Shown piece after piece: positions 51,001 to 63,963 of a DNA stretch of 64,000 nucleotides (position 1 is the first letter of the stretch; every line of letters begins with the position of its first letter). Below the pieces are notes generated by a model, which saw nothing but the letters and a program-made list of their open reading frames with translations, was not told the DNA's origin and searched no databases. The position numbers were made by a program, and so were the translations under genes. Where the stretch lies: contig OZ249437.1 in assembly GCA_965235115.1 (NCBI GenBank), forward strand, positions 22,072,001 to 22,136,000, in the 5' to 3' direction. The DNA is from Laetmonice hystrix (Eukaryota).

Positions 51001-54000
51001 TTGTAACAGCAGTGCCTGCCTTATGAAATGAGCACGGGAGCAATCAATCACACCCGTATACATGTCAAGTTAGGGGAGCTAAAGGGGAGTGATACCGGAT
51101 GCTCCCTCCCGACTCGAAAATGAGGAAGGAAAATCATACCTGATGACGTTAAGCTTCCAGTGCATGGTTATTTACCCATGTATGAATCTTTATTCAGAGA
51201 ACCTACGGGAGAACGTAATAATATTGAGTTCTAGACAAATACAATATTTGTATGATACCATATTGTACTACAGTTACAACATTTGCTTGATATATTATCA
51301 TACAATGGCTGTCAATTAAAACTCAAGATGCCATATATCCTACTGTGGTTGTGGAGAAAAAGTCCAAAGGTACAGATCTATTTATATTAGATGATATTAT
51401 ACTGAAGGGACACGTTGATTTTAACTGAACCTTTTCATATGATTTTTCGTTCAGTACAGGTAGATAATATGTTGTCATAAATCAATTAGTTGAGATGGTC
51501 TCATGAAACTAGCGGATCTAAGACAATGAGTGCTACATTTTCCTTTCCTTTTATTGAAGGGGGCAAGAGCAAATCTGTGGAACTCGAGGACGTGAAGTTC
51601 CATCAGTGTGTGCGCCTGTCACGCTTTGAAAATGATCGCACCATTTCATTCATTCCTCCGGATGGCGAATTTGAGCTGATGTCCTACAGGCTCAACACAC
51701 ATGTGAGTACAACTTTTCACATTTAGTATAAACAACCTGAACCATTAGCCTGGAGGCATTGTGGGGCTTAGAGGCATTGTGGGGCCTAGAGGCATTGTCG
51801 GCTTGGAGGCATTGTGGGGCCGGAGGCATTGTGGGGCCCGGAGGCAGTGTGGGGCCCAGAGGCAGTGTGGGGCCCGGAGGCAGTGTGGGGCCCGGAGGCA
51901 GTATGGGGCCCGGAGGCAGTGTAGGGCCCAGAGGCAGTGTGGGGCCAGGAGGCATTGTCGGCTTGGAGGCATTGTGGGGCCCGGAGGCAGTGTGGGGCCA
52001 GGAGGCAGTGTGGGGCCAGGAGGCAGTGTGGGGCCAGGAGGCAGTGTGGGGCCAGGAGGCAGTGTGGGGCCAGCAGGCAGTGTGGGGCCAGCAGGCAGTG
52101 TGGGGCCCGGAGGCAGTGTGGGGCCCGGAGGCATTGTGGGGCTTAGAGGCATTGTGGGGCCTAGAGGCATTGTCGGCTTGGAGGCATTGTGGGGCCGGAG
52201 GCATTGTGGGGCCCGGAGGCAGTGTGGGGCCTAGAGGCAGTGTGGGGCCCGGAGGCAGTGTGGGGCCCGGAGGCAGTGTGGGGCCCGGAGGCAGTGTAGG
52301 GCCCAGAGGCAGTGTGGGGCCAGGAGGCATTGTCGGCTTGGAGGCATTGTGGGGCCCGGAGGCAGTGTGGGGCCAGGAGGCAGTGTGGGGCCAGGAGGCA
52401 GTGTGGGGCCAGCAGGCAGTGTGGGGCCAGCAGGCAGTGTGGGGCCAGCAGGCAGTGTGGGGCCAGCAGGCAGTGTGGGGCCCGGAGGCAGTGTGGGGCC
52501 CGGAGGCAGTGTGGGGCCAGGAGGCAGTGTGGGGCCAGGAGGCAGTGTGGGGCCAGGAGGCAGTGTGGGGCCAGGAGGCAGTGTGGGGCCAGGAGGCAGT
52601 GTGGGGCCAGGAGGCAGTGTGGGGCCAGGAGGCAGTGTGGGGCAGGAGGCAGTGTGGGGCCCGGAGGCAGTGTGGGGCCCGGGGGCAGTGTGGGGTATGA
52701 TGAAGTCACACACAGGTGGGTACCACATTGTTCTGACTTATGCTGAGGCTACACACAGATGTGTACTATTGTTTTGATATATGGTGAAGTCGCATATTGT
52801 TTTGCGTGTTTTAACACATGGTCATGTATCGTAATATGTTACAGGTAAAACCTTTGATATGGGTTGAGTCAGTCATCGAGCGCCACCAACACAGTAGAGT
52901 GGAGTACATGATTAAGGTAAGTACCGACAAACTGAAGTCTGTAGCTCAAATACCATCTACCAATGGTTTCAGATGTAAACAAATATCTAAACACTATCTA
53001 CTTTTGTAGTTTTAAAAATAAGGTTGTATGGATGAAGGGCCAGGTTTTATTTTAAGATCAAACCTGGTCTTGGAAGATCATATAAAGGTCTTATTTTAGT
53101 TGCAGAAATTTCATAGAAAACCAGAAAAAATTACTTGTTTGATTGAAATATAATTTATTCTGTCTTATCTAGGCTAAAAGTCAATTCAAAAGACGTTCCA
53201 CAGCAAACAATGTTGAGATAGTCATCCCTGTTCCACAAGATGCAGACTCACCGAAATTCAAGACAACAACCGGAAACTGCAAATATGCACCAGACCAGAA
53301 CGCAGTCATATGGACCATTAAATCATTCCCGGTTTGTATAGTTTCTTTGGTGTTTGTAGGGAGGGAAGGACTACTTGATGAGAGCTTGCTGTGGTCTGAC
53401 TGACCCTCACTGAGTGTGTTTGGTGTTTGTAGGGAGGGAAGGAGTACTTGATGAGAGCTTGCTGTGGTCTGACTGACCCTTGCTGAATGTGTTTGGTGTT
53501 TGTAGGGAGGGGAGGAGTACTTGATGAGAGCTTGCTGTGGTCTGACGGACCCTGACCGAGTGTTTGGTGGGAGGGAAGGAGTACTTGATGAGAGCTTGCT
53601 GTGGTCTGATTGACCCTCACTGAGTGTGTTTGGTGTTTGTAGGGAGGGAAGGAGTACTTGATGAGAGCTTGCTGTGGTCTGACTGACCCTCACTGAGTGT
53701 GTTTGGTGTTTGTAGGGAGGGAAGGAGTACTTGATGAGAGCTTGCTGTGAACAAGAAGTTCTTTCAAAGTTTGAACATACCGTCGTTTGTATTTTCGTTT
53801 CTTTTACATTGCAACTCCTCGCATCGAGGTAAAAAACCATCAGCTTTCGCCGGTCGTGCGGATCACCCGTTCTCTCGCGAGATCTCCCTCCCGAGATCAA
53901 ACTGTGGTGTCGCGGTATATTTAGACTTACTAAAACTAAACTAAGTCTCTCAGTTGGTTCCAGAACACTCCTCGCCTGGTTTTAGGATAAAATCACTACT

Positions 54001-57000
54001 AGTGAGTCTTGTGGCTGTAGAATGTCTCTGTCCACATATTGTCTATAACAATACTCGTTAACTAAACTACTGTAATCTCTACAGTCCAATGTTAGGAACT
54101 AAAATTGTGGACGAGTTATGAATGATAAGGTTATTAATGCAGGTCTTCGTTTTGAAGCAGCAACACAAGTTCGGTAACAGGGCGAGCGTAGACCCGCTTG
54201 ACGCCATCCCGCGCTGTCTGAACGCGGACCTTGCGGACCTGTTTGTCACTGCTGGGTAAAGTTTCAATGACACGTGCGTAGGGCCAGTCATTGCGATGGG
54301 TGGTGTCCTTGAGGAGCACAAGGTCACCCACTTGCAGATTGCGCTGATGGGCCTGCCAGCGCTTTCGCGGTTGGAGTGTAGGCAGGTACTCCTTCCGCCA
54401 GCGGCTCCAGAATAATTGAGCAAGATGTTGGACCCGTCGCCACTGGCGTCCACAGGCGTTTGCTGCATGAGTGAAGTCTCCTGGGGGTGGCCCTATAGGG
54501 CTGGACTTCATGGTAAGTATAGCGGCTGGCGAAAGAACTTCAGGGCTGTCTGGGTCCGATGACACTGCGACCAGAGGCCGACAGTTGATAATGGCTGACA
54601 CCTCAGCCATGAATGTGGAAAGAAGTTCATGCGTTAGTGGCACCTTCGTTTCTCGGAGAATGGAGTCCAGGATGCGTCTACTCACACCGATAAGGCGCTC
54701 CCAAGCACCTCCCATATGCGATGCATGGGGCACGTTGAACTTCCACTGCATGCTGTTCTGTGTGAGATAGGTCTCTAGAGTAGTCTTGTCCATTTCCCTT
54801 AGCGCCTCATTCAGCTCTCTTGAGGCTCCAATGAAATTGGTGCCACAGTCAGAGTAACAGCATTTCACCTGGCCACGTATGGCCATGAACCGGCGAAGGG
54901 CGTTGAGAAATGATGAAGTAGTGAGTTCTTCAATCAATTCAATGTGGACAGCCCTCGTGGCCATGCATGTGAACAACACTGCCCACCGTTTACTATGGCC
55001 TCCAGTGCTGCGTGTCCGCCGAGTAGAAACGGTCCAGGGGCCAAACACATCTAGGCCGACATGGGTGAAGGGTGGTGAAGGCGTGGTCCTTTCTGGTGGG
55101 AGATCTGCCATGCGTTGTGTTGTGTGGACTGCTCGCAGCTTCCGGCAGGTCACACACTTGTTCAAGATGTCAGATATTAAACGTTTTCCTCCCACGATCC
55201 AGTAGCCCTGCGTGCGGACAGCTCCGGCCGTAATCTGACGTCCCTGGTGACGCACATTCTGATGCACGTTGCGCACAATCAAGGTTGCGATGTACTGGCG
55301 TTTGTGTAGTAGAATGGGGTGTTTCTCCTTGTCCTCTAGGTCTGAGAGATCAAGGCGGCCACCAACTCTCATGACTCCGTACTTGTCTAGAAAGGGGCTC
55401 AGTTTGTAGAGGGTGCTTCCCTGGGAAACTTTACCATAGCGTTGCAGATGTTGGATGTCTGACTTGAAGTCGTCCTGTTGTGCTGTCTTGATTATCAGTA
55501 ACGCGGCACCTTCCATGGTCTCAACTAACCACTCGCTACGGGGACTGACATGCAGCTGGTTGGGCGTAGTCTTGGAAGACTTGTAGAGACGAATAAAGTG
55601 CATCAGCATGGCGATGGCTTTCACGAGTGAGCTCCAGCTTGAGAAGCGAGTGAAACGTTTTGAACCAAGATGTTCCTCGGCCTGAGCTGTGACCGTTGCT
55701 GCAGTGCGAACTTCAGGGTCATCCTGTGGAGTCACATAGGGTAGGCTGGTGCACATGTTTACCTGTGAGGCATGCAGAAATCTGGGGCCTTGCAACCATG
55801 AAGAGTTCATCAATTCGTGTGCCTTGACGGAGCGTGTTGCCAGGTCTGCCGGATTGACATCCGTTGAGACGTAGTGCCACTGGGGGGGTGTGCTGGTTTT
55901 GCGAATACGTTGCACCCTATTCGCAACATAGACATAGAATCGTCTGGACTCGTTTTGTACGTAGCCCAGCACCACCTTGCTATCCGTGTAGTAGCTGACT
56001 GACGTAAGTTGTATGTCCAACTCGTCAAGAACGGTGTCCGCCAGTTCCACTGCTAGAACTGCTGCGCACAGTTCCATGCGGGGAATTGTTATGGGCTGAG
56101 CTGGTGACAGCTTAGCTTTCCCAGCCACAAACTGGACTGTGACCCTGTCTTTGTCGTCGCATAGGCGTAGGTATCCACAGGCTGCGATTGCTTCTGTAGA
56201 TGCGTCACAGAAGACATGTAGCTCACGATGAGAGTTGAGTGACATGGGATGTTTGCAGTAGGCTCGTGGAACGTAAACCTCGGCGAGGTCCACGAGAGAG
56301 GTGCACCACCTTTCCCAGCGCTCCCTGAACTTGTCCGGCAATGGCTCGTCCCAGTCGAGTGGCTTGCCATCTGGTCCAGCTGTCGTCATCTGGCGCAAGA
56401 GAATTTTTCCCTTGATGATCACCGGCGCGGCCAAGCCGAGAGGGTCGAAAATACCATTTACCAGGGATAGAACGCCTCGCCTTGTGTAGCATTTGTTGAT
56501 GTCAGGCGCTTTGAAGACGATTTGATCGCTATGAAGATCCCAATACACACCAAGTGAGCTCTGTATTGGAAGGGTGTCAGCACTAAGGTCCAGGCTCCGT
56601 AGGCTGGGTGCATGTTCAGACTGCGGAAAGTGCGACATTACTTCCATGCTGTTTGAGGCTATTTTGTGAAGATGAAGGTTGGCTGTTGCCAGCATCTCCC
56701 TGGTACGCGTCAGGAGATCTATGGCCTTTTCTGCTGTGGGAAGACTTGTCAGCCCATCGTCGACATAGAAGTTGTGCTCCACAAACTGTCGTGCGTCCGC
56801 GCCGAACTTGCTTTCATTGAGCTCCGCGGTCTTGCGCAATCCATAGGCTGCGATGGCAGGGCTTGGACGATTGCCAAAAACATGGACCTTCATACGGTGC
56901 TCACAAACCTCCTTATCAGGGTTGTTGTCCTTGAACCATAGGAATCTTAGCCAGTCGCGATGGTCCTCTTGTACATAGAAGCAGTAGAACATGTGTTCCA

Positions 57001-60000
57001 CATCGGCCATGATCCCAACAGGCTCCTGGCGGAATCTGAGGAGTACTCCAAAGAGCGAGTTGTACATGTCTGGACCTGTAAGGAGTGCCTGGTTGAGTGA
57101 TTTTCCATTCCAGGTGGCGCTGCTGTCAAAGACTATACGTAGGTCTTTAGGTTTGCGGGGGTGGAACACGCCAAAATGAGGAAGGTACCACCGAGGGCGA
57201 GACTCTCCAGTGTTGGAACCTGGTTTGATGGCTTCAGCATGATCCCTTGCGAGCAGCTTGCCCATGCATTCCACATACCGCTGCTTCAGTGCTGGATTTT
57301 TATTGAAGAGCTTGCAAAGACACTTGAGACGATTCATTGCCATGCACCTGTTGTTCTCCAGGGAGACGGTGTGTTTGAAGGGTAGAGGGGCGACCCAGTA
57401 TCCTCTGTCATCCTTGACAAACACATCCCGCATGATTGTCATGAATTGTCGGTCCTCGTTCGACAGACCAGGTTTATCATCATTCTTTGTTTTGATGAAT
57501 ACATCTCGGCCTATGCTGTCTTCTGTTTTGCAGCTACTGTTAATGTCTGGCAGAGTGCCGGATAGCGAGTGTGAGTCAGTGACAGCATCATCGCGTAGAA
57601 GGATGCGATTGGAACAAGGAGAACAGAGAGATGGTCTCCCATTGTCAACAATGTGGGTCCGGTAGACGTCGATTTTGTCAGGCTTGTGCATTCCCTTGAG
57701 GCAGATGTCCCCCACAATGACCCAGCCGAGATCAGTACGTTGTGCCCACGGAGCATTTGCTGGTCCATTACGCGACTCCCTAACTTTAAGAAGTTGTGGT
57801 GCATCCCTGCCGATGAGTAGCATGATTTCCGCCTCTGCGCGGTAAGGTGGGATTTTAGTTGCGATTGGGCGCATGTGACTGTAGATTTTAGCGACATCAG
57901 CAGTGGGAATCTCAGACCGGTTGCTAGGGATAACGTTACATTCTGTGATTGTCGGAAGCGGCAACTGCGTGGTGCCATCGATGGACTCAATGACCAGATC
58001 ATTTATACGCCTCCCTAGTGCAGCACTTGAGCCCGCACATGTTCGCAGTTCATAAGGGATAGGCTCATTGCGACAGTTAAAGTAACTAAAGAGTTTACTG
58101 CTGGCGAGGGAACGGTTGGACTGGTCGTCCAGTACTGCATACATGGTGAGGACTTTGGTTGGGTTTTTGGCACTGTAGACATTGACTAGACATATTTTGG
58201 AGCATGACCTGTTGCCAAACCCACTCTTGGCACAGATCTTGGTGCAATTGTTGACAATCTTCACTGGCTCCCCGCCGTAGACTTGGCGGGACCCAGATGC
58301 TTGAGTTTTACCTTGAGAGCATGGGTGAAGCACCGAGCAGTGCTCAGTACTGTGGCAGTCAGAACACTGTATGCGCTCGTTGCAGTCGGCAGTTACATGT
58401 TGAGTTGATGCTGTACACCTGTTGCAAATTCCCCACTGGGTGAGAAGTTGCATCCTGGTATCAATGGACTTTGCTTTAAAGGCTCTGCAGTCAGCTAGCA
58501 GGTGATTTTTAGTGTTATGGAGCATGCAAGCTTGCCTTGGGTCCATCAATGACTGCGTGCTGTGTGAACCGTACCTTTCCGGTTTCCTTTGTGAAGTGTC
58601 ATTAGATGCACTGGGTCTCACGTTCGTCTTGTTGACCCGAACTGTACCATAGGTTGGTCGTGTGCCTCTAGTTGGACGATACACGTTGCTTGGAGCAAAC
58701 CGGGGTGCTTTTGTTGTAATTGGAGTGATTTGCAGGCTCAGGTCATTCCAGATATTGGATAATCGTCTGAGAAAGGCTGCTAACTCAGAAAATGGGGGAA
58801 AGCTTCCTCTATACAACTCCTTATACTTGAAGGCTTCGGCCCTCCAATTGTCCACTACAGGCAGTGGAAGTTTGGCTACGATAGGTTTAATAAACTGAGG
58901 CGTATCCAACGCTGCAAGTCCACCAAGAGAACCATCATTTTTAGCTGCTTCCACTTCCTCGACTATGTCGCTAAATCTCTGCAAGCCTGGCCCATCCCGT
59001 GATGCCACAGTAGGTAGTTGCTCCAGCTTCCGGATGAGTGCTTGCGTTACAGCTTCATCACTACCGAAGCGCTGGTATAGACGTCCCCATGCTTCACTTA
59101 GACCTTTGTCCGGATTGGCTATGTATGCCCTACTAAGCCGCTTCACCATCTGTTGAGCCTCAGACCCCTCAGCCATGTGCTCAGCCATCAGATTTAACTG
59201 TTCATCTGAAGAGAGTGGAACATTTTTTATCATGTTGCAGAAGGATAATCTCCAAATCCTGAAGTCCTCTGCTTTGTCCTCAAATTTAAAGATTTTAGAA
59301 GATACCAAGTCTTGCCATAGTAAATACTCGCCAAGGTTTTTTATGGACGAAACCATAGCTGCACTTCCCTCGCCTTCCACTCGTTGCATTTCATGTGGGT
59401 AGGCAGATGATGAGAGACGTGGCGAAACTTGGCCTGTAGTCGGCTGAGTGCGAAACTGGTCAGCTGCTGGGTATGGTTGATGACCAATCCCTGGAGCAGT
59501 CATGGGTGGCATGGTCGGCGACATGGCGTTACCCTGACGTGGCATACTTGAGACAACTGAAGGTTGTGTTATAGGTGGGTACACAGATGATGAGAGACGT
59601 GGCGAGACGTGGCCTGCAGTCGGCTGAGTGCGAAACTGGTCAGCTGCTGGGTATGGTTGATGACCAATCCCTGGTGCAGTCATGGGTGACATGGTTGGCG
59701 ACATGGCGTTACCCTGACGTGGCATACTTGAGACAACTGAAGGTTGTGTTATAGGTGGGTACACAGATGATGAGAGACGTGGCGAGACGTGGCCTGCAGT
59801 CGGCTGAGTGCGAAACTGGTCAGCTGCTGGGTATGGTTGATGACCAATCCCTGGTGCAGTCATGGGTGACATGGTTGGCGACATGGCGTTACCCTGACGT
59901 GGCATACTTGAGACAACTGAAGTTTGTGTGGTTGACATACCTGTGGCAAGTGACAACTTCTGTGGAGATTCATGACATGGGCTGTGATAATGCTCATTCA

Positions 60001-63000
60001 TGGCTGCTGTGGTTGTGAAAACTTCATTATACTGGCTGGGTGCTGACTGTCCCATGTCCAGGTCACCCATGTACACTGTGCCCTTTGTGGGTGAGACACC
60101 CGTCACTGAGTCTGAAACCTGTCGATCAGCAGGTAAGTCAATGTTTGGCGTACTGACCTTAATAGGTTGTCCCTGAGCTTCATCAGTACCTGAGAACATT
60201 AGGTCCACCTTTTCAGCCGGTGTAGGTAGCTGAGACACGGGCATGCACTCATCGACGCCTCCACCTTCAAGTTCACAGAACGCTTCCTCGATAGCCCGGA
60301 GCCGTGCGTCTGCTACCGCCGCTTCTTCCTCGAGATGTAACCGCTCGACCTCTAACCGGCGTACCGTGGCTTCCAGTTGAGCCTGAGCCAACCTACCTCC
60401 GCTGGCTGCTCTAGTTTTGGCTTCCGCAGCCTTAGCTCGAGCTTCCGCTATGACAGTTGATGACTGTGATGAGCTGGATGAGCCGGTATGCGACCGTGAA
60501 CAGCGAGATGCTGACATCGTTCCGGGCGATAATGGGTGTGGTTAGCTGTGCTACACGTGGTATTCACGTGGTTGGATTGTCGGCGCTCGACTCGGCGATG
60601 TTTGCTAGGTTTTTTACTGTACTGGAACCCCCAATCGGGAATCGGGGACATCCCAGGCAGTTACCACAAGAAGTTCTTTCAAAGTTTGAACATACCGTCG
60701 TTTGTATTTTCGTTTCTTTTACATTGCAACTCCTCGCATCGAGGTAAAAAACCATCAGCTTTCGCCGGTCGTGCGGATCACCCGTTCTCTCGCGAGATCT
60801 CCCTCCCGAGATCAGACTGTGGTGTCGCGGTATATTTAGACTTACTAAAACTAAACTAAGTCTCTCAGTTGGTTCCAGAACAGAAGGAGTACTTGGTGAG
60901 AGCCTGCTGTGGTCTGACTGACCCTCACTGAGTGTCTGGAGTTTGTAGGGAGGGAAGGAGTACTTGATGAGAGCCTGCTGTGGTCTGACTGACCCTCACT
61001 GAGTGTGTTTGGTGTTTGTAGGGAGGGAAGGAGTATGATGAGAGCCTGCCGTGGTCTGACTGACCCTCACTGAGTGTGTTTGGAGTTTGTAGGGAGGGAA
61101 GGAGTACTTGATGAGAGCTTGCTGTGGTCTGACTGACCCTCACTGAGTGTCTTTGGTGTTTGTGGGGAGGGAAGGAGTACTTGATGAGAGCTTTCTGTGG
61201 TCTGACTGACCCTCACTGAGTGTGTTTGGTGTTTGTAGGGAGGGAAGGAGTACTTGATGAGAGCTTGCTGTGGTCTGACTGACCCTCACTGACTGTCTTT
61301 GGTGTTTGTAGGGAGGGAAGGAGTACTTGAGGAGAGCCAGCTATGGTCTGACTGACCCTCACTGAGTGTGTTTGGTGTTTGTAGGGAGGGACGGAGTACT
61401 TGATGAGAGCTAGCTGTGGTCTGACTGACCCTCACTGAGTGTCTTTGGTGTTTGTAGGGAGGGAAGGAGTATGATGAGAGCCTGCTGTGGTCTGACTGAC
61501 CCTCACTGAGTGTGTTTGGAGTTTGTAGGGAGGGAAGGAGTACTTGATGAGAGCTTGCTGTGGTCTGACTGACCCTCACTGAGTGTGTTTGGTGTTTGTG
61601 GGGAGGGAAGGAGTACTTGATGAGAGCTTTCTGTGGTCTGACTGACCCTCACTGAGTGTGTTTGGTGTTTGTAGGGAGGGAAGGAGTACATGATGAGAGC
61701 TTGCTGTGGTATGACTGACCCTCACTGAGTGTGTTTGGTGTTTGTAGGGAGGGAAGGAGTACTTGATGAGAGCTTGCTGTGGTCTGACTGACCCTCACTG
61801 AGTGTGTTTGGTGTTTGTAGGGAGGGAAGGAGTACTTGAGGAGAGCCAGCTATGGTCTGACTGACCCTCACTGAGTGTGTTTGGTGTTTGTAGGGAGGGG
61901 AGGAGTACTTGATGGGAGCTTGCTATGGTCTGACTGACCCTCACTGAGTGTGTTTGGTGTTTGTAGGGAGGGAAGGAGTACTTGATGAGCGCTTGCTGTG
62001 GTCTGACTGACCCTCACTGAGTGTTTGGTGTTTGTAGGGAGGGAAGGAGTACTTGATGAGCGCTTGCTGTGGTCTGACTGACCCTCACTGAGTGTGTTTG
62101 GTGTTTGTAGGGAGGGAAGGAGTACTTGATAAGAGCCTGCTGTGGTCTGACTGACCCTCACTGAGTGTGTTTGGTGTTTGTAGGGAGGGAGGGAAGGACT
62201 ACTTGATGAGAGCTTGCTGTGGTCTGACTGACCCTCACTGAGTGTGTTTGGTGTTTGTAGGGAGGGAAGGAGTACTTGATGAGCGCTTGCTGTGGTCTGA
62301 CTGACCCTCACTGAGTGTGTTTGGTGTTTGTAGGGAGGGAAGGAGTACTTGATGAGAGCTTGCTGTGGTCTGACTGACCCTCACTGAGTGTGTTTGGTGT
62401 TTGTAGGGAGGGAAGGAGTACTTGATGAGAGCTGGCTGTGGTCTGACTGACCCTCACTGAGTGTGTTTGGTGTTTGTAGGGAGGGACGGAGTACTTGATG
62501 AGAGCTTGCTGTGGTCTGACTGACCCTCACTGAGTGTCTTTGGTGTTTGTAGGGAGGGAAGGAGTATGATGAGAGCTTGCTGTGGTCTGACTGACCCTCA
62601 CTGAGTGTCTTTGGTGTTTGTGGGGAGGGAAGGAGTACTTGATGAGAGCTTTCTGTGGTCTGACTGACCCTCACTGAGTGTGTTTGGTGTTTGTAGGGAG
62701 GGAAGGAGTACTTGATGAGAGCTTGCTGTGGTCTGACTGACCCTCACTGAGTGTGTTTGGTGTTTGTAGGGAGGGAAGGAGTACATGATGAGAGCTTGCT
62801 GTGGTATGACTGACCCTCACTGAGTGTGTTTGGTGTTTGTAGGGAGGGAAGGAGTACTTGATGAGAGCTTGCTGTGGTCTGATTGACCCTCACTGAGTGT
62901 GTTTGGTGTTTGTAGGGAGGGAAGGAGTACTTGAGGAGAGCCAGCTATGGTCTGACTGACCCTCACTGAGTGTGTTTGGTGTTTGTAGGGAGGGAAGGAG

Positions 63001-63963
63001 TACTTGATGGGAGCTTGCTATGGTCTGACTGACCCTCACTGAGTGTGTTTGGTGTTTGTAGGGAGGGAAGGAGTACTTGATGAGCGCTTGCTGTGGTCTG
63101 ACTGACCCTCACTGAGTGTTTGGTGTTTGTAGGGAGGGAAGGAGTACTTGATGAGCGCTTGCTGTGGTCTGACTGACCCTCACTGAGTGTGTTTGGTGTT
63201 TGTAGGGAGGGAAGGAGTACTTGATGAGAGCCTGCTGTGGTCTGACTGACCCTCACTGAGTGTGTCTGGTGTTTGTAGGGAGGGAAGGAGTACTTGATGA
63301 GAGCTTGCTGTGGTCTGACTGACCCTCGCTGAATGTGTTTGGTGTTTGTAGGGAGGGGAGGAGTACTTGATGAGAGCCTGCTGTGGTCTGACTGACCCTC
63401 ACTGAGTGTCTTTGGTGTTTGTAGGGAGGGAAGGAGTACTTGATGAGAGCTTGCTGTGGTCTGACTGACCCTCACTGAGTGTCTTTGGTGTTTGTAGGGA
63501 GGGAAGGAGTACTTGATGAGAGCCCACTTTGGTCTGCCGTCGGTGATAGGAGAGGAGACCGAGGGCAGGCCCCCGATTCACGTCCGTTTTGAGATCCCTT
63601 ACTTCACCGTGTCAGGAATCCAGGTTAGCCCCCTTTAAATGATAAATACCAGCAAAAATGTGTCTTCCACCTTATTTCCTTCATGAATTTAATTTGAACT
63701 TGTCTCAAAAAGAGATTATTTTAGTAGCAACATAAAGACAGTTAAACTTTGTTACCTACTAGTGTGTGAAGTTAAAGGAAACTCAGTCTTGTTTATGTTG
63801 GCTATACAATATCGATGTTAAATGTCAATGTTGCCTTTCATAATCTACTTTCCTTTCTTAACAGGTTCGTTATCTGAAAATTATTGAGAAGAGCGGTTAC
63901 CAGGCGTTGCCATGGGTACGATATATCACACAGAACGGCGACTACCAACTACGTACACAGTAA
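45051..63963 (+). CDS. AP1M1: AP-1 complex subunit mu-1, 422 aa, 11 coding exons
   Basis: Exons 45051-45092, 45288-45444, 46749-46816, 47029-47159, 47407-47551, 47784-47910, 51560-51702, 52845-52916, 53173-53331, 63498-63623, 63865-63963; sum 1269 nt. MSASAVYILDLKGK...SGMPELRLGLNDK...FHQCVRL...PPDGEFELMSYRL...YQALPWVRYITQNGDYQLRTQ* is recognisably mu1-adaptin. A non-coding exon probably ends at 43862. Confidence 0.95.
45445..46748 (+). other. U12-type (minor spliceosome) GT-AG intron, AP1M1 intron after coding exon 2
   Basis: 5' site GTATCCTTG; branch site TTCCTTGAT at 46727-46735 with the branch A 14 nt before the AG; no polypyrimidine tract. Confidence 0.85.
46227..46546. mobile_element. 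MITE with ~100-bp TIRs inside the U12 intron
   Basis: TAGCCTACATAAATCAATAAGTGTGTACCCACAG... pairs with ...CTGTGGGAATACATTTATCGATTTAAGTAGGCTA. Confidence 0.7.
47990..48540. repeat. 50-bp minisatellite in AP1M1 intron 6
   Basis: TTATTTTTGTTCTATCCTAGACACAGCCCTTGGCAGTCAGCCTGACTTTG x11. Confidence 0.95.
50110..50207. mobile_element. Small palindromic element remnant
   Basis: TTCTGATTGG-cag-CCAATCAGAA centre with TTGCTTAAGCT/AGCTTAAGCAA arms; a related remnant lies near 21150-21215. Confidence 0.5.
51748..52697. repeat. 18-bp GC-rich minisatellite in AP1M1 intron 7
   Basis: GAGGCAGTGTGGGGCC[AC]G, ~50 copies with higher-order blocks. Confidence 0.95.
53751..53967 (-). repeat. 3' LTR (217 bp, missing the last 48 bp of U5)
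   Basis: Matches 60666-60882 with one visible mismatch (gatcaaactg vs gatcagactg). Confidence 0.9.
54134..60517 (-). CDS. BEL/Pao gag-pol polyprotein (2127 aa, uninterrupted)
   Basis: Three Cys/His knuckles (CMLHNTKNHLLADC, CNRCTASTQHVTADC, CSDCHSTEHCSVLH), protease AVLDDQS, RT ADVEHMF/FGNRPSP/FYVDD, RNase H LHVFCDAS, integrase H-H-C-C plus GLDVFGP, SDCGTNF, GGAWE, and the C-terminal LQVGDLVLL block. Confidence 0.95.
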   Translation of the reverse strand: MSASRCSRSHTGSSSSSQSSTVIAEARAKAAEAKTRAASGGRLAQAQLEATVRRLEVERLHLEEEAAVADARLRAIEEAFCELEGGGVDECMPVSQLPTPAEKVDLMFSGTDEAQGQPIKVSTPNIDLPADRQVSDSVTGVSPTKGTVYMGDLDMGQSAPSQYNEVFTTTAAMNEHYHSPCHESPQKLSLATGMSTTQTSVVSSMPRQGNAMSPTMSPMTAPGIGHQPYPAADQFRTQPTAGHVSPRLSSSVYPPITQPSVVSSMPRQGNAMSPTMSPMTAPGIGHQPYPAADQFRTQPTAGHVSPRLSSSVYPPITQPSVVSSMPRQGNAMSPTMPPMTAPGIGHQPYPAADQFRTQPTTGQVSPRLSSSAYPHEMQRVEGEGSAAMVSSIKNLGEYLLWQDLVSSKIFKFEDKAEDFRIWRLSFCNMIKNVPLSSDEQLNLMAEHMAEGSEAQQMVKRLSRAYIANPDKGLSEAWGRLYQRFGSDEAVTQALIRKLEQLPTVASRDGPGLQRFSDIVEEVEAAKNDGSLGGLAALDTPQFIKPIVAKLPLPVVDNWRAEAFKYKELYRGSFPPFSELAAFLRRLSNIWNDLSLQITPITTKAPRFAPSNVYRPTRGTRPTYGTVRVNKTNVRPSASNDTSQRKPERYGSHSTQSLMDPRQACMLHNTKNHLLADCRAFKAKSIDTRMQLLTQWGICNRCTASTQHVTADCNERIQCSDCHSTEHCSVLHPCSQGKTQASGSRQVYGGEPVKIVNNCTKICAKSGFGNRSCSKICLVNVYSAKNPTKVLTMYAVLDDQSNRSLASSKLFSYFNCRNEPIPYELRTCAGSSAALGRRINDLVIESIDGTTQLPLPTITECNVIPSNRSEIPTADVAKIYSHMRPIATKIPPYRAEAEIMLLIGRDAPQLLKVRESRNGPANAPWAQRTDLGWVIVGDICLKGMHKPDKIDVYRTHIVDNGRPSLCSPCSNRILLRDDAVTDSHSLSGTLPDINSSCKTEDSIGRDVFIKTKNDDKPGLSNEDRQFMTIMRDVFVKDDRGYWVAPLPFKHTVSLENNRCMAMNRLKCLCKLFNKNPALKQRYVECMGKLLARDHAEAIKPGSNTGESRPRWYLPHFGVFHPRKPKDLRIVFDSSATWNGKSLNQALLTGPDMYNSLFGVLLRFRQEPVGIMADVEHMFYCFYVQEDHRDWLRFLWFKDNNPDKEVCEHRMKVHVFGNRPSPAIAAYGLRKTAELNESKFGADARQFVEHNFYVDDGLTSLPTAEKAIDLLTRTREMLATANLHLHKIASNSMEVMSHFPQSEHAPSLRSLDLSADTLPIQSSLGVYWDLHSDQIVFKAPDINKCYTRRGVLSLVNGIFDPLGLAAPVIIKGKILLRQMTTAGPDGKPLDWDEPLPDKFRERWERWCTSLVDLAEVYVPRAYCKHPMSLNSHRELHVFCDASTEAIAACGYLRLCDDKDRVTVQFVAGKAKLSPAQPITIPRMELCAAVLAVELADTVLDELDIQLTSVSYYTDSKVVLGYVQNESRRFYVYVANRVQRIRKTSTPPQWHYVSTDVNPADLATRSVKAHELMNSSWLQGPRFLHASQVNMCTSLPYVTPQDDPEVRTAATVTAQAEEHLGSKRFTRFSSWSSLVKAIAMLMHFIRLYKSSKTTPNQLHVSPRSEWLVETMEGAALLIIKTAQQDDFKSDIQHLQRYGKVSQGSTLYKLSPFLDKYGVMRVGGRLDLSDLEDKEKHPILLHKRQYIATLIVRNVHQNVRHQGRQITAGAVRTQGYWIVGGKRLISDILNKCVTCRKLRAVHTTQRMADLPPERTTPSPPFTHVGLDVFGPWTVSTRRTRSTGGHSKRWAVLFTCMATRAVHIELIEELTTSSFLNALRRFMAIRGQVKCCYSDCGTNFIGASRELNEALREMDKTTLETYLTQNSMQWKFNVPHASHMGGAWERLIGVSRRILDSILRETKVPLTHELLSTFMAEVSAIINCRPLVAVSSDPDSPEVLSPAAILTMKSSPIGPPPGDFTHAANACGRQWRRVQHLAQLFWSRWRKEYLPTLQPRKRWQAHQRNLQVGDLVLLKDTTHRNDWPYARVIETLPSSDKQVRKVRVQTARDGVKRVYARPVTELVLLLQNEDLH
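60618..60882 (-). repeat. 5' LTR (complete, 265 bp)
   Basis: TGT...ACA termini with an 11/12 terminal inverted repeat (TGTTCTGGAACC / GGTTCCAGTACA). Confidence 0.85.

What the first reader, a model, noticed from the sequence alone, without database searches (positions are those of the whole stretch)
60608..60753. BEL/Pao element with a Tf1-like self-priming configuration instead of a tRNA primer site
Seen: directly after the 5' LTR end (...CCAGTACA) the element reads GTAAAAAACC, not the TGG expected for a tRNA 3' end. Inside the LTR, at positions 130-139 of 265 (60753-60744; also 53838-53829), is GGTTTTTTAC, its exact 10/10 reverse complement. The pairing stops precisely at the LTR boundary, so the 3' C would be placed to copy U5. 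The 10-mer lies ~35 nt downstream of a TCTCGCGAGA promoter motif, a plausible transcription start. Established: S. pombe Tf1 and related Ty3/gypsy chromoviruses prime with the first ~11 nt of their own mRNA after RNase H cleavage. I do not know of this being shown for BEL/Pao. Caveat: the A6 run lowers the statistical weight of a 10-mer match.
Basis: partly seen in the sequence, partly recalled or inferred. Interest (0 to 1): 0.8.

Follow-up and report, generated by a model that had tools for sequence, protein, structure and literature searches.

The report
Self-priming site in BEL/Pao retrotransposons
A young, intact BEL/Pao retrotransposon has, where a tRNA primer site should be, 10 bases that pair with a stretch inside its own LTR; the same co-varying layout in about 20 related elements from corals to fish and ticks suggests this group primes reverse transcription with its own RNA, as yeast Tf1 does.

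Summary
The 5' LTR is 265 nt (60882-60618, minus strand); its ends are fixed by 5-bp target duplications in six other copies. GTAAAAAACC follows it directly, and the exact complement GGTTTTTTAC lies at LTR nt 130-139.

- Ten BEL/Pao families of this genome (RT 39-65% identical) carry a different 8-12-nt post-LTR sequence, each matching its own LTR 99-139 nt upstream.
- The LTR end was verified in nine of the ten.
- Run length (3-8), the third base (A/G with T/C, 17 of 17) and the distal bases all co-vary.
- Control anchors reach 8 nt or more in 3 of 960 cases. Swapping LTRs between elements never reaches the observed fit (0 of 100,000).
- Two tick elements and two assembled contigs show 10-13 nt. 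Zebrafish, coral, sturgeon and crinoid show the same motif with only 5-7 nt.
- The motif usually starts at a pyrimidine/purine, often CAG, step. An AATAAA or ATTAAA lies 19-51 nt downstream in 12 of 17.

No RNA data exist, so the transcript start and the cleavage are inferred. No paper found links BEL/Pao with self-priming; ICTV describes tRNA priming. Two other first-reader notes on this genome flag the same idea.

The parts
60618..60882 (-). 5' LTR, 265 nt, TGTTCTGGAACC...GGTTCCAGTACA
   Evidence: Direct repeat with the 3' LTR. Ends fixed by 3'/solo LTR matches and 5-bp target duplications in other copies.
60788..60797 (-). TCTCGCGAGA motif in presumed U3, ending 34 nt upstream of the self-primer motif
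   Evidence: Coordinates. A promoter role is inferred, not tested.
60744..60753 (-). Proposed self-primer GGTTTTTTAC (LTR nt 130-139), the presumed first 10 nt of the transcript (start of R)
   Evidence: Exact complement of 60608-60617. Co-varies with the post-LTR site across families. Preceded by T, giving a pyrimidine/purine step.
60618..60753 (-). Presumed R-U5, 136 nt. No canonical AATAAA; the variant AATACA lies at 60708-60703.
   Evidence: Geometry shared with relatives, where AATAAA/ATTAAA lies 19-51 nt after the motif. Folds with z = -2.59, and the 5' end pairs with the primer site in the MFE and centroid structures.
60622..60657 (-). Predicted U5 hairpin just upstream of the primer site; its 3' arm is the LTR terminal inverted repeat
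   Evidence: Predicted. The two sister families also have a hairpin here. It is weaker in more distant families.
60608..60617 (-). Primer-binding site GTAAAAAACC, starting at the first base after the LTR
   Evidence: Identical in all eight full copies.
54134..60517 (-). Intact gag-pol ORF, 2127 aa
   Evidence: Pfam PF05380 (E 5.5e-45) and PF18701.
53968..53983 (-). Polypurine tract region AAAACCAGGCGAGGAG abutting the 3' LTR
   Evidence: The same ...CCAGGCGAGGAG precedes the 3' LTR in all copies.
53751..53967 (-). 3' LTR, cut off after nt 217 where the 73-nt satellite resumes. It holds the second copy of the motif (53829-53838).
   Evidence: One mismatch to the 5' LTR.

Best explanation
The stretch is the R-U5 part of the 5' LTR plus the primer-binding site of a recently active BEL/Pao retrotransposon that most likely primes its own minus-strand DNA synthesis, as Tf1 does.

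Proposed steps:
1. Transcription starts at or within a base or two of the G of GGTTTTTTAC (inferred).
2. The first 10 nt of the RNA fold back over about 126 nt of R-U5 and pair with GTAAAAAACC, which sits directly after U5 (the pairing potential is shown).
3. The element's RNase H cuts the RNA after ...UAC (inferred by analogy with Tf1).
4. The 3' C of that 10-mer, paired with the first base after the LTR, is extended to copy U5 and R (inferred; it is what defines the LTR boundary).
5. Because plus-strand strong-stop synthesis copies the primer, the primer site is rewritten from the LTR motif every cycle. This explains why the two co-vary even in homopolymer length.

The same layout in many families of this genome, and in ticks, other fishes, a coral and a crinoid, indicates an old, shared property of this BEL/Pao lineage.
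For: 1. The match is exact and anchored at a verified LTR end.
2. Sister families change both sides together: AGTTTTTTAC/GTAAAAAACT and G-T8-AC/GT-A8-C.
3. Ten families of this genome have anchored complements of 8-12 nt, 99-139 nt upstream of the LTR end. At 96 other anchor points per family the mean is about 4 nt, and 8 nt or more occurs in 3 of 960. LTR ends were verified by 3'/solo LTRs in nine of the ten.
4. Across 17 elements, each primer site fits its own LTR far better than other elements' LTRs: sum 157 against a permuted mean of 92 and maximum of 128, 0 of 100,000. The third base co-varies in 17 of 17.
5. Other species: Dermacentor 11 nt, Ixodes 13 nt, two Logan contigs 10 nt each.
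6. The motif is preceded by a pyrimidine and starts with a purine, often in CAG, in most families. AATAAA/ATTAAA lies 19-51 nt downstream in 12 of 17. Together these fit the motif marking the start of R.
7. No TGG follows the LTR. The 14-nt complement is found only in the element's own copies plus one non-tRNA site.
8. The 10-bp, zero-offset match meets the operational criterion used to predict self-priming in plant elements (PMC6317226). The Tf1 mechanism is as described in PMC7175516.
Against: - There is no transcript-start, strong-stop cDNA or cleavage data. No RNA runs exist for this organism, and the runs that hold the stretch are DNA contigs.
- Our own family lacks a CA initiator and a canonical AATAAA.
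- In zebrafish, coral, sturgeon and crinoid elements the perfect complement is only 5-7 nt, and the A-run after the LTR is longer than the T-run in the LTR.
- In three families of this genome (F2, F7, F8) the LTR/primer site was not located.
- No full tRNA set was examined.
- One copy has GGTTTTTTAT in both LTRs with an unchanged primer site. The model can explain this, but it is not positive evidence.
Confidence: 0.75

Rival explanations
1. The pairing is a conserved closing stem of the R-U5 leader, serving packaging, dimerisation, translation control or strand transfer. The real primer is something else that was not identified.
For: The stem is predicted in the MFE and centroid folds. Retroviral leaders do contain U5-leader pairings (established knowledge). 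Selection on a stem could also produce covariation.
Against: The pairing begins exactly at the first base after the LTR in every verified case. That position is by definition where the primer's 3' end sits. No tRNA-like site (TGG...) follows within the next bases. The sequence downstream of the 10-mer is not conserved as a tRNA complement between sister families. Matching homopolymer lengths from 3 to 8 are more easily explained by templated copying than by selection on a stem.
Confidence: 0.12
2. A host small RNA primes synthesis at GT(A/G)AAAA..., either a tRNA half as in copia or another RNA ending ...UUUU(U/C)AC. The LTR motif is unrelated.
For: The core GT(A/G)AAA is conserved from coral to fish, as a site for a conserved host RNA would be. 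Half-tRNA priming exists in Ty1/copia elements (PMC6317226). No complete tRNA set was tested here.
Against: The distal bases and run lengths differ between families living in one genome, and each matches its own LTR. A single host RNA cannot fit all of them. Runs of 5-8 U are Pol III terminators, so they cannot lie inside a nuclear tRNA (established knowledge). The 14-nt complement has no host locus beyond one non-tRNA site. A tRNA-Glu-like anticodon arm recalled from memory matched no tRNA gene in this genome. This rival does not explain the LTR motif's fixed position.
Confidence: 0.05
3. It is a chance match between an A-run and a T-run in low-complexity sequence.
For: Six of the ten bases are one homopolymer.
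Against: About 3e-4 expected per LTR. The layout repeats with different sequences in 10 or more families and in other phyla. Control anchors and permutations exclude chance.
Confidence: 0.01

Closest known systems
Tf1/Tf2 of Schizosaccharomyces pombe and the Tf1/sushi group (Ty3/gypsy chromoviruses)
   Same: There is no tRNA site. A short sequence directly after U5 (11 nt in Tf1; 10 here, 8-13 in relatives) is complementary to a sequence inside the LTR, which in Tf1 is the first 11 nt of the mRNA. A U5 hairpin sits next to the site. Mechanism as summarised in PMC7175516.
   Different: It belongs to a different superfamily (BEL/Pao, PF05380/DUF5641). The primer sequence is unrelated and U-rich with an invariant ...AC 3' end. 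The 5'-end position and the RNase H cut are shown for Tf1 but only inferred here.
Predicted self-priming plant elements: Tcn1 clade (Ty3/gypsy) and TAR/Houba/Osr-1 (Ty1/copia), Neumann et al. 2019 (PMC6317226)
   Same: They were identified by the same sequence criterion: at least 10 bp of 5' LTR complementary to a site 0-5 bp after the LTR. Our element meets it with 10 bp at offset 0.
   Different: Those are plant elements of the other two superfamilies. Here the prediction is also backed by cross-family and cross-phylum covariation.
BEL/Pao (Belpaoviridae, Semotivirus) as described by ICTV, and Achilles of Bactrocera oleae
   Same: Same polyprotein families, TG...CA LTRs, 5-bp target duplication and a polypurine tract.
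   Different: ICTV describes an 18-nt site complementary to tRNA-Arg or tRNA-Gly and replication primed by a host tRNA (PMC8742986). Achilles has a tRNA-Tyr site (PMC4580426). The elements studied here have neither.
Drosophila copia and plant half-tRNA-primed Ty1/copia elements
   Same: The primer site does not start with TGG, and the primer's 3' end would be made by cleavage inside a longer RNA.
   Different: There the site matches an internal part of a host tRNA. Here it matches the element's own LTR and varies with it.

Membership tests
BEL/Pao LTR retrotransposons (Belpaoviridae) | Polyprotein with the Pao-type domain (PF05380) and the C-terminal DUF5641 | tested here: met
   PF05380 E 5.5e-45 and PF18701 E 2.1e-25 in the 2127-aa ORF. 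Relatives are annotated likewise across metazoans.
BEL/Pao LTR retrotransposons (Belpaoviridae) | LTRs with TG...CA ends, short target duplication, polypurine tract | tested here: met
   265-nt LTR TGT...ACA, 5-bp duplications in six copies and a solo LTR, and ...GGCGAGGAG before the 3' LTR.
BEL/Pao LTR retrotransposons (Belpaoviridae) | Primer site complementary to the 3' end of a host tRNA (ICTV description) | tested here: not met
   No TGG after the LTR. No host locus for the 14-nt complement. No Rfam match. This is a descriptive feature, not one that defines the clade.
Self-primed LTR retrotransposons (Tf1-like mechanism) | At least 10 bp of the 5' LTR complementary to a site 0-5 bp after the LTR | tested here: met
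   10/10 at offset 0. 8-13 nt in relatives.
Self-primed LTR retrotransposons (Tf1-like mechanism) | The complementary LTR sequence is the very 5' end of the transcript | not testable with these tools
   No RNA runs. Indirect support only: a pyrimidine/purine or CAG step at the motif start, and a poly(A) signal 19-51 nt downstream.
Self-primed LTR retrotransposons (Tf1-like mechanism) | RNase H cleavage of the RNA duplex releases the primer | not testable with these tools
   Needs biochemistry.
Self-primed LTR retrotransposons (Tf1-like mechanism) | U5-IR-like stem-loop beside the primer site | tested here: inconclusive
   Strong predicted hairpin in ours and the sister families (-16 to -19 kcal/mol over the last 60 nt). 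It is weak in several other families.
Tf1/sushi clade (phylogenetic membership) | Ty3/gypsy chromovirus polyprotein | tested here: not met
   The polyprotein is BEL/Pao. It works like Tf1 but is not a member of that clade.
Half-tRNA-primed elements (copia type) | Site complementary to an internal tRNA segment | tested here: inconclusive
   No tRNA set was obtained. U-runs of 5-8 and family-specific covariation argue against it. A recalled tRNA-Glu arm found no tRNA gene.

The most novel reading that the evidence does not exclude
Self-priming from the transcript's own 5' end is the ancestral and general way that a pan-metazoan BEL/Pao lineage (cnidarians, echinoderms, arthropods, vertebrates) starts reverse transcription. 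All three LTR-retrotransposon superfamilies would then contain self-primers, which supports the idea that hairpin/self priming preceded tRNA priming (discussed in PMC3601003).
Probability: 0.5. Interest if true: 0.8.

Novelty: new variant of a known kind. Interest (0 to 1): 0.72.

Why it matters
Self-priming has been shown for Tf1 (Tf1/sushi group of Ty3/gypsy) and predicted for some plant Ty3/gypsy and Ty1/copia clades. BEL/Pao is described as tRNA-primed. If the reading holds:
- The textbook and ICTV description of Belpaoviridae replication needs correcting for a large, widespread lineage.
- Annotation pipelines that demand a tRNA site will miss or mis-score these elements.
- The question of which priming mode is ancestral to LTR elements gains a third, independent data point.
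- Zebrafish and ticks, which have public transcript-start data or are tractable in the laboratory, carry the same motif. The prediction can therefore be tested there directly.

Tried and rejected
- RNA evidence: no RNA run holds the stretch. The three runs that hold it proved to be DNA contigs and say nothing about transcript ends.
- Assembled Logan contigs (L078, L086, L087): they start 22 and 80 nt upstream of the motif, or downstream of where it should be. They look like one period of a repeat graph, so they give no start site.
- tRNA alternative: ARAGORN found no tRNA in the window or in 269 kb of fetched loci. A tRNA-Glu(UUC)-like anticodon arm recalled from memory gave two one-mismatch sites, at control level, and neither is a tRNA. 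This is a dead lead, not a test of all tRNAs.
- A possible TGG site 48 nt inside the LTR (TGGTAACTGCC...), suggested by the truncated 3' LTR, was rejected once other copies fixed the LTR end.
- TGGTCAAACATCGCC downstream of the site in the sister family is not matched by a TGG in our family.
- Families F2, F7 and F8: the fetched pieces hold no recognisable LTR/primer site. My coordinate estimates were probably off, or the leaders are long.
- The nearest foreign relative (P0001, 65%) and the Bufo element gave no DNA.

Full report
**What is in the window.**
On the minus strand lies a complete BEL/Pao retrotransposon.
- The 5' LTR is 60882-60618 (265 nt).
- A 100-nt leader follows, then one open frame of 2127 aa (60517-54134) with PF05380 and DUF5641.
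- A polypurine tract precedes the 3' LTR (53967-53751), which breaks off after nt 217 where a 73-nt satellite resumes.
- The two LTRs differ at 1 of 217 positions, so the insertion is young.

The genome settles it. Eight full copies and one solo LTR are 98-100% identical. 3' and solo LTR matches stop at nt 264-265. Six copies and the solo LTR have matching 5-bp target duplications. The LTR is TGTTCTGGAACC...GGTTCCAGTACA, an 11/12 terminal inverted repeat.

**The observation.**
GTAAAAAACC (60617-60608) starts at the first base after the LTR. Its exact complement GGTTTTTTAC is at LTR nt 130-139 (60753-60744, and 53838-53829 in the 3' LTR). The 10-mer occurs three times in the window against 0.15 expected. 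Pairing cannot extend into the LTR end. All eight full copies carry the same post-LTR sequence.

**Covariation in close relatives.**
The element's gag finds two sister lineages at about 54-56% identity.
- The C6 element has a verified LTR end (target duplication GTGAT). It reads AGTTTTTTAC in the LTR and GTAAAAAACT after it, so both sides have changed.
- The C7 element has its LTR end verified by two other LTR copies. It reads G-T8-AC and GT-A8-C, so both homopolymers have lengthened together.
- The C7 3' LTR reads CACAGTGGG-T9-AC. Apart from two one-base homopolymer differences, this would pair with 15 nt after the LTR, starting at the A of CACAGT.

**Covariation in distant families of the same genome.**
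The genome holds hundreds of BEL/Pao copies in many families. I fetched the 5' regions of families with RT 37-45% identical to ours.

| Family | LTR motif | Post-LTR site | Length (nt) |
|---|---|---|---|
| F1 | AGTCTTTTTAC | GTAAAAAGACT | 11 |
| F3 | AGTTTTCAC | GTGAAAACT | 9 |
| F4 | GTTTTCAC | GTGAAAAC | 8 |
| F5 | AGTTTTTCAC | GTGAAAAACT | 10 |
| F6 | AGTTTTAC | GTAAAACT | 8 |
| F9 | AGTTTCAC | GTGAAACT | 8 |
| F10 | GTGTTTTTTCAC | GTGAAAAAACAC | 12 |

- In each family the motif lies 99-125 nt upstream of the LTR end.
- LTR ends were verified by 3' or solo LTR copies for F1, F3, F5, F6, F9 and F10. F4 was not verified.
- An eleventh family (F11) has AGTTTGTAC in the LTR and GTACAAAT downstream, but its LTR end is unverified.
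- As a control, the longest LTR complement anchored at 96 other positions per family averages about 4 nt. It reaches 8 nt or more in 3 of 960 cases, against 8-12 nt in 10 of 10 at the true anchor.

**Other species.**
Relatives at 47-52% RT identity occur in teleosts, amphibians, sturgeon, ticks, cnidarians and a crinoid.

| Element | LTR motif | Post-LTR site | Length (nt) | Distance upstream (nt) |
|---|---|---|---|---|
| Dermacentor variabilis | CGCGTTTTTAC | GTAAAAACGCG | 11 | 117 |
| Ixodes scapularis | CACCGTCTTTTAC | GTAAAAGACGGTG | 13 | 112 |
| Logan contig L078 | CTCTTTTCAC | GTGAAAAGAG | 10 | 110 |
| Logan contig L086 | TCCTTTTTAC | GTAAAAAGGA | 10 | 118 |

The Dermacentor LTR end is confirmed by the target duplication GAGGT. 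The Ixodes LTR pair is 100% identical; its duplication was not worked out.

Zebrafish, Oculina, sturgeon and the crinoid Anneissia keep the same motif (for example TTTCAGTTTTAC) and the same GT(A/G)AAA start. Their perfect complement is only 7, 7, 6 and 5-6 nt, because the A-run is longer than the T-run.

Across 17 elements each post-LTR site fits its own LTR far better than the others' LTRs. The own-pair sum is 157. Permuted pairs have mean 92 and maximum 128, and none of 100,000 permutations reaches 157. The third base (A or G) matches T or C in the LTR in 17 of 17.

**Where the motif sits.**
- The base before the motif is a pyrimidine and its first base a purine in most families. In six families of this genome (the C6 sister, F1, F5, F6, F9, F11) the match starts at the A of CAG, an initiator-like context.
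- AATAAA or ATTAAA lies 19-51 nt after the motif start in 12 of 17 elements.
- This is the layout expected if the motif marks the start of R.
- Our own family is less canonical: it has T|GG, no AATAAA (only AATACA), and a TCTCGCGAGA motif ending 34 nt upstream.
- The 146-nt R-U5-site RNA folds with z = -2.59. The 5' end closes on the primer site, and a strong U5 hairpin lies beside it.

**Mechanism.**
The base after U5 is by definition paired with the primer's 3' end. Here that primer must end ...UUUU(U/C)AC, so it is not a CCA-ending tRNA. A single host RNA cannot fit run lengths from 3 to 8 within one genome. Runs of 5-8 U cannot lie inside a Pol III gene (established knowledge).

The only other genomic copy of the 14-nt complement is an AT-rich non-tRNA site. 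Rfam finds nothing.

The Tf1 scheme explains all of this. In Tf1 the first 11 nt of the mRNA pair with the primer site, and RNase H cuts between nt 11 and 12 (PMC7175516). Because the primer is copied during plus-strand strong-stop synthesis, the scheme also explains the homopolymer-length covariation.

One copy (L007/L013) has GGTTTTTTAT in both LTRs and an unchanged primer site. That is the expected first-generation outcome of a change in a parent's 3' LTR. This point is inference only.

**What is not shown.**
- The transcript start, the cleavage and the cDNA-primer junction were not observed. No RNA runs exist for this organism, and the runs that hold the stretch are DNA contigs.
- A full tRNA set was not examined.
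- Three families (F2, F7, F8) were not resolved.
- The foreign sample was chosen by similarity to this element. It says nothing about BEL/Pao lineages with reported tRNA sites, such as Achilles.

**Literature.**
- ICTV describes Belpaoviridae as primed by host tRNA-Arg or tRNA-Gly.
- Surveys of BEL/Pao and the Sinbad paper do not discuss priming.
- Self-priming is documented for Tf1/sushi and predicted for Tcn1 and TAR.
- No paper in the searchable library links it with BEL/Pao. Older subscription papers, such as Frame et al. 2001 and Lin and Levin 1997, could not be read, so prior mention cannot be excluded.
- Two other first-reader notes in this scan flag the same geometry in other BEL/Pao copies of this genome.

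**Verdict.**
It is a new variant of a known kind of mechanism, and it applies to a whole lineage rather than to one element.

Noticed in passing
window 53346-53749 and 60883-63523: The element sits inside a 73-nt satellite array of about 36 copies on one side. The 3' LTR is cut at nt 217 and abuts the satellite without a matching target duplication, so a deletion or recombination followed insertion.
   Followed up: partly
window 59395-59929: Three tandem copies of a 180-nt unit (97% alike) lie inside the gag-coding part of the ORF. Copies elsewhere have open frames of 2133-2194 aa, which suggests variable repeat number.
   Followed up: partly
window 52000-52695: An 18-nt minisatellite (AGGAGGCAGTGTGGGGCC), about 39 copies.
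   Followed up: no
G000:C11:21626512-21693308: At least ten BEL/Pao units lie head to tail with a 7,370-bp period. This is a tandem array of whole elements rather than dispersed copies.
   Followed up: no
L051 (G000:C7:5710040-5710960), reverse-complement positions 300-651: A roughly 350-nt interspersed repeat with over 1,000 candidate copies at 97-98% identity abuts the truncated 5' LTR of the C7 sister element. It is SINE-like.
   Followed up: partly
L007 and L013 (G000:C1:59946093-59949474 and 59953001-59956264): One copy of our family has GGTTTTTTAT in both LTRs while its primer site is still GTAAAAAACC. This would give a G-U pair at the primer's 3' end.
   Followed up: partly
L060, L061, L065, L066 (families F4, F5, F9, F10): Leaders of 500-800 nt separate the primer site from the long ORF. 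Some contain tandem repeats, and F7 (L063) has 30-nt repeats. Our family's leader is only 100 nt.
   Followed up: no
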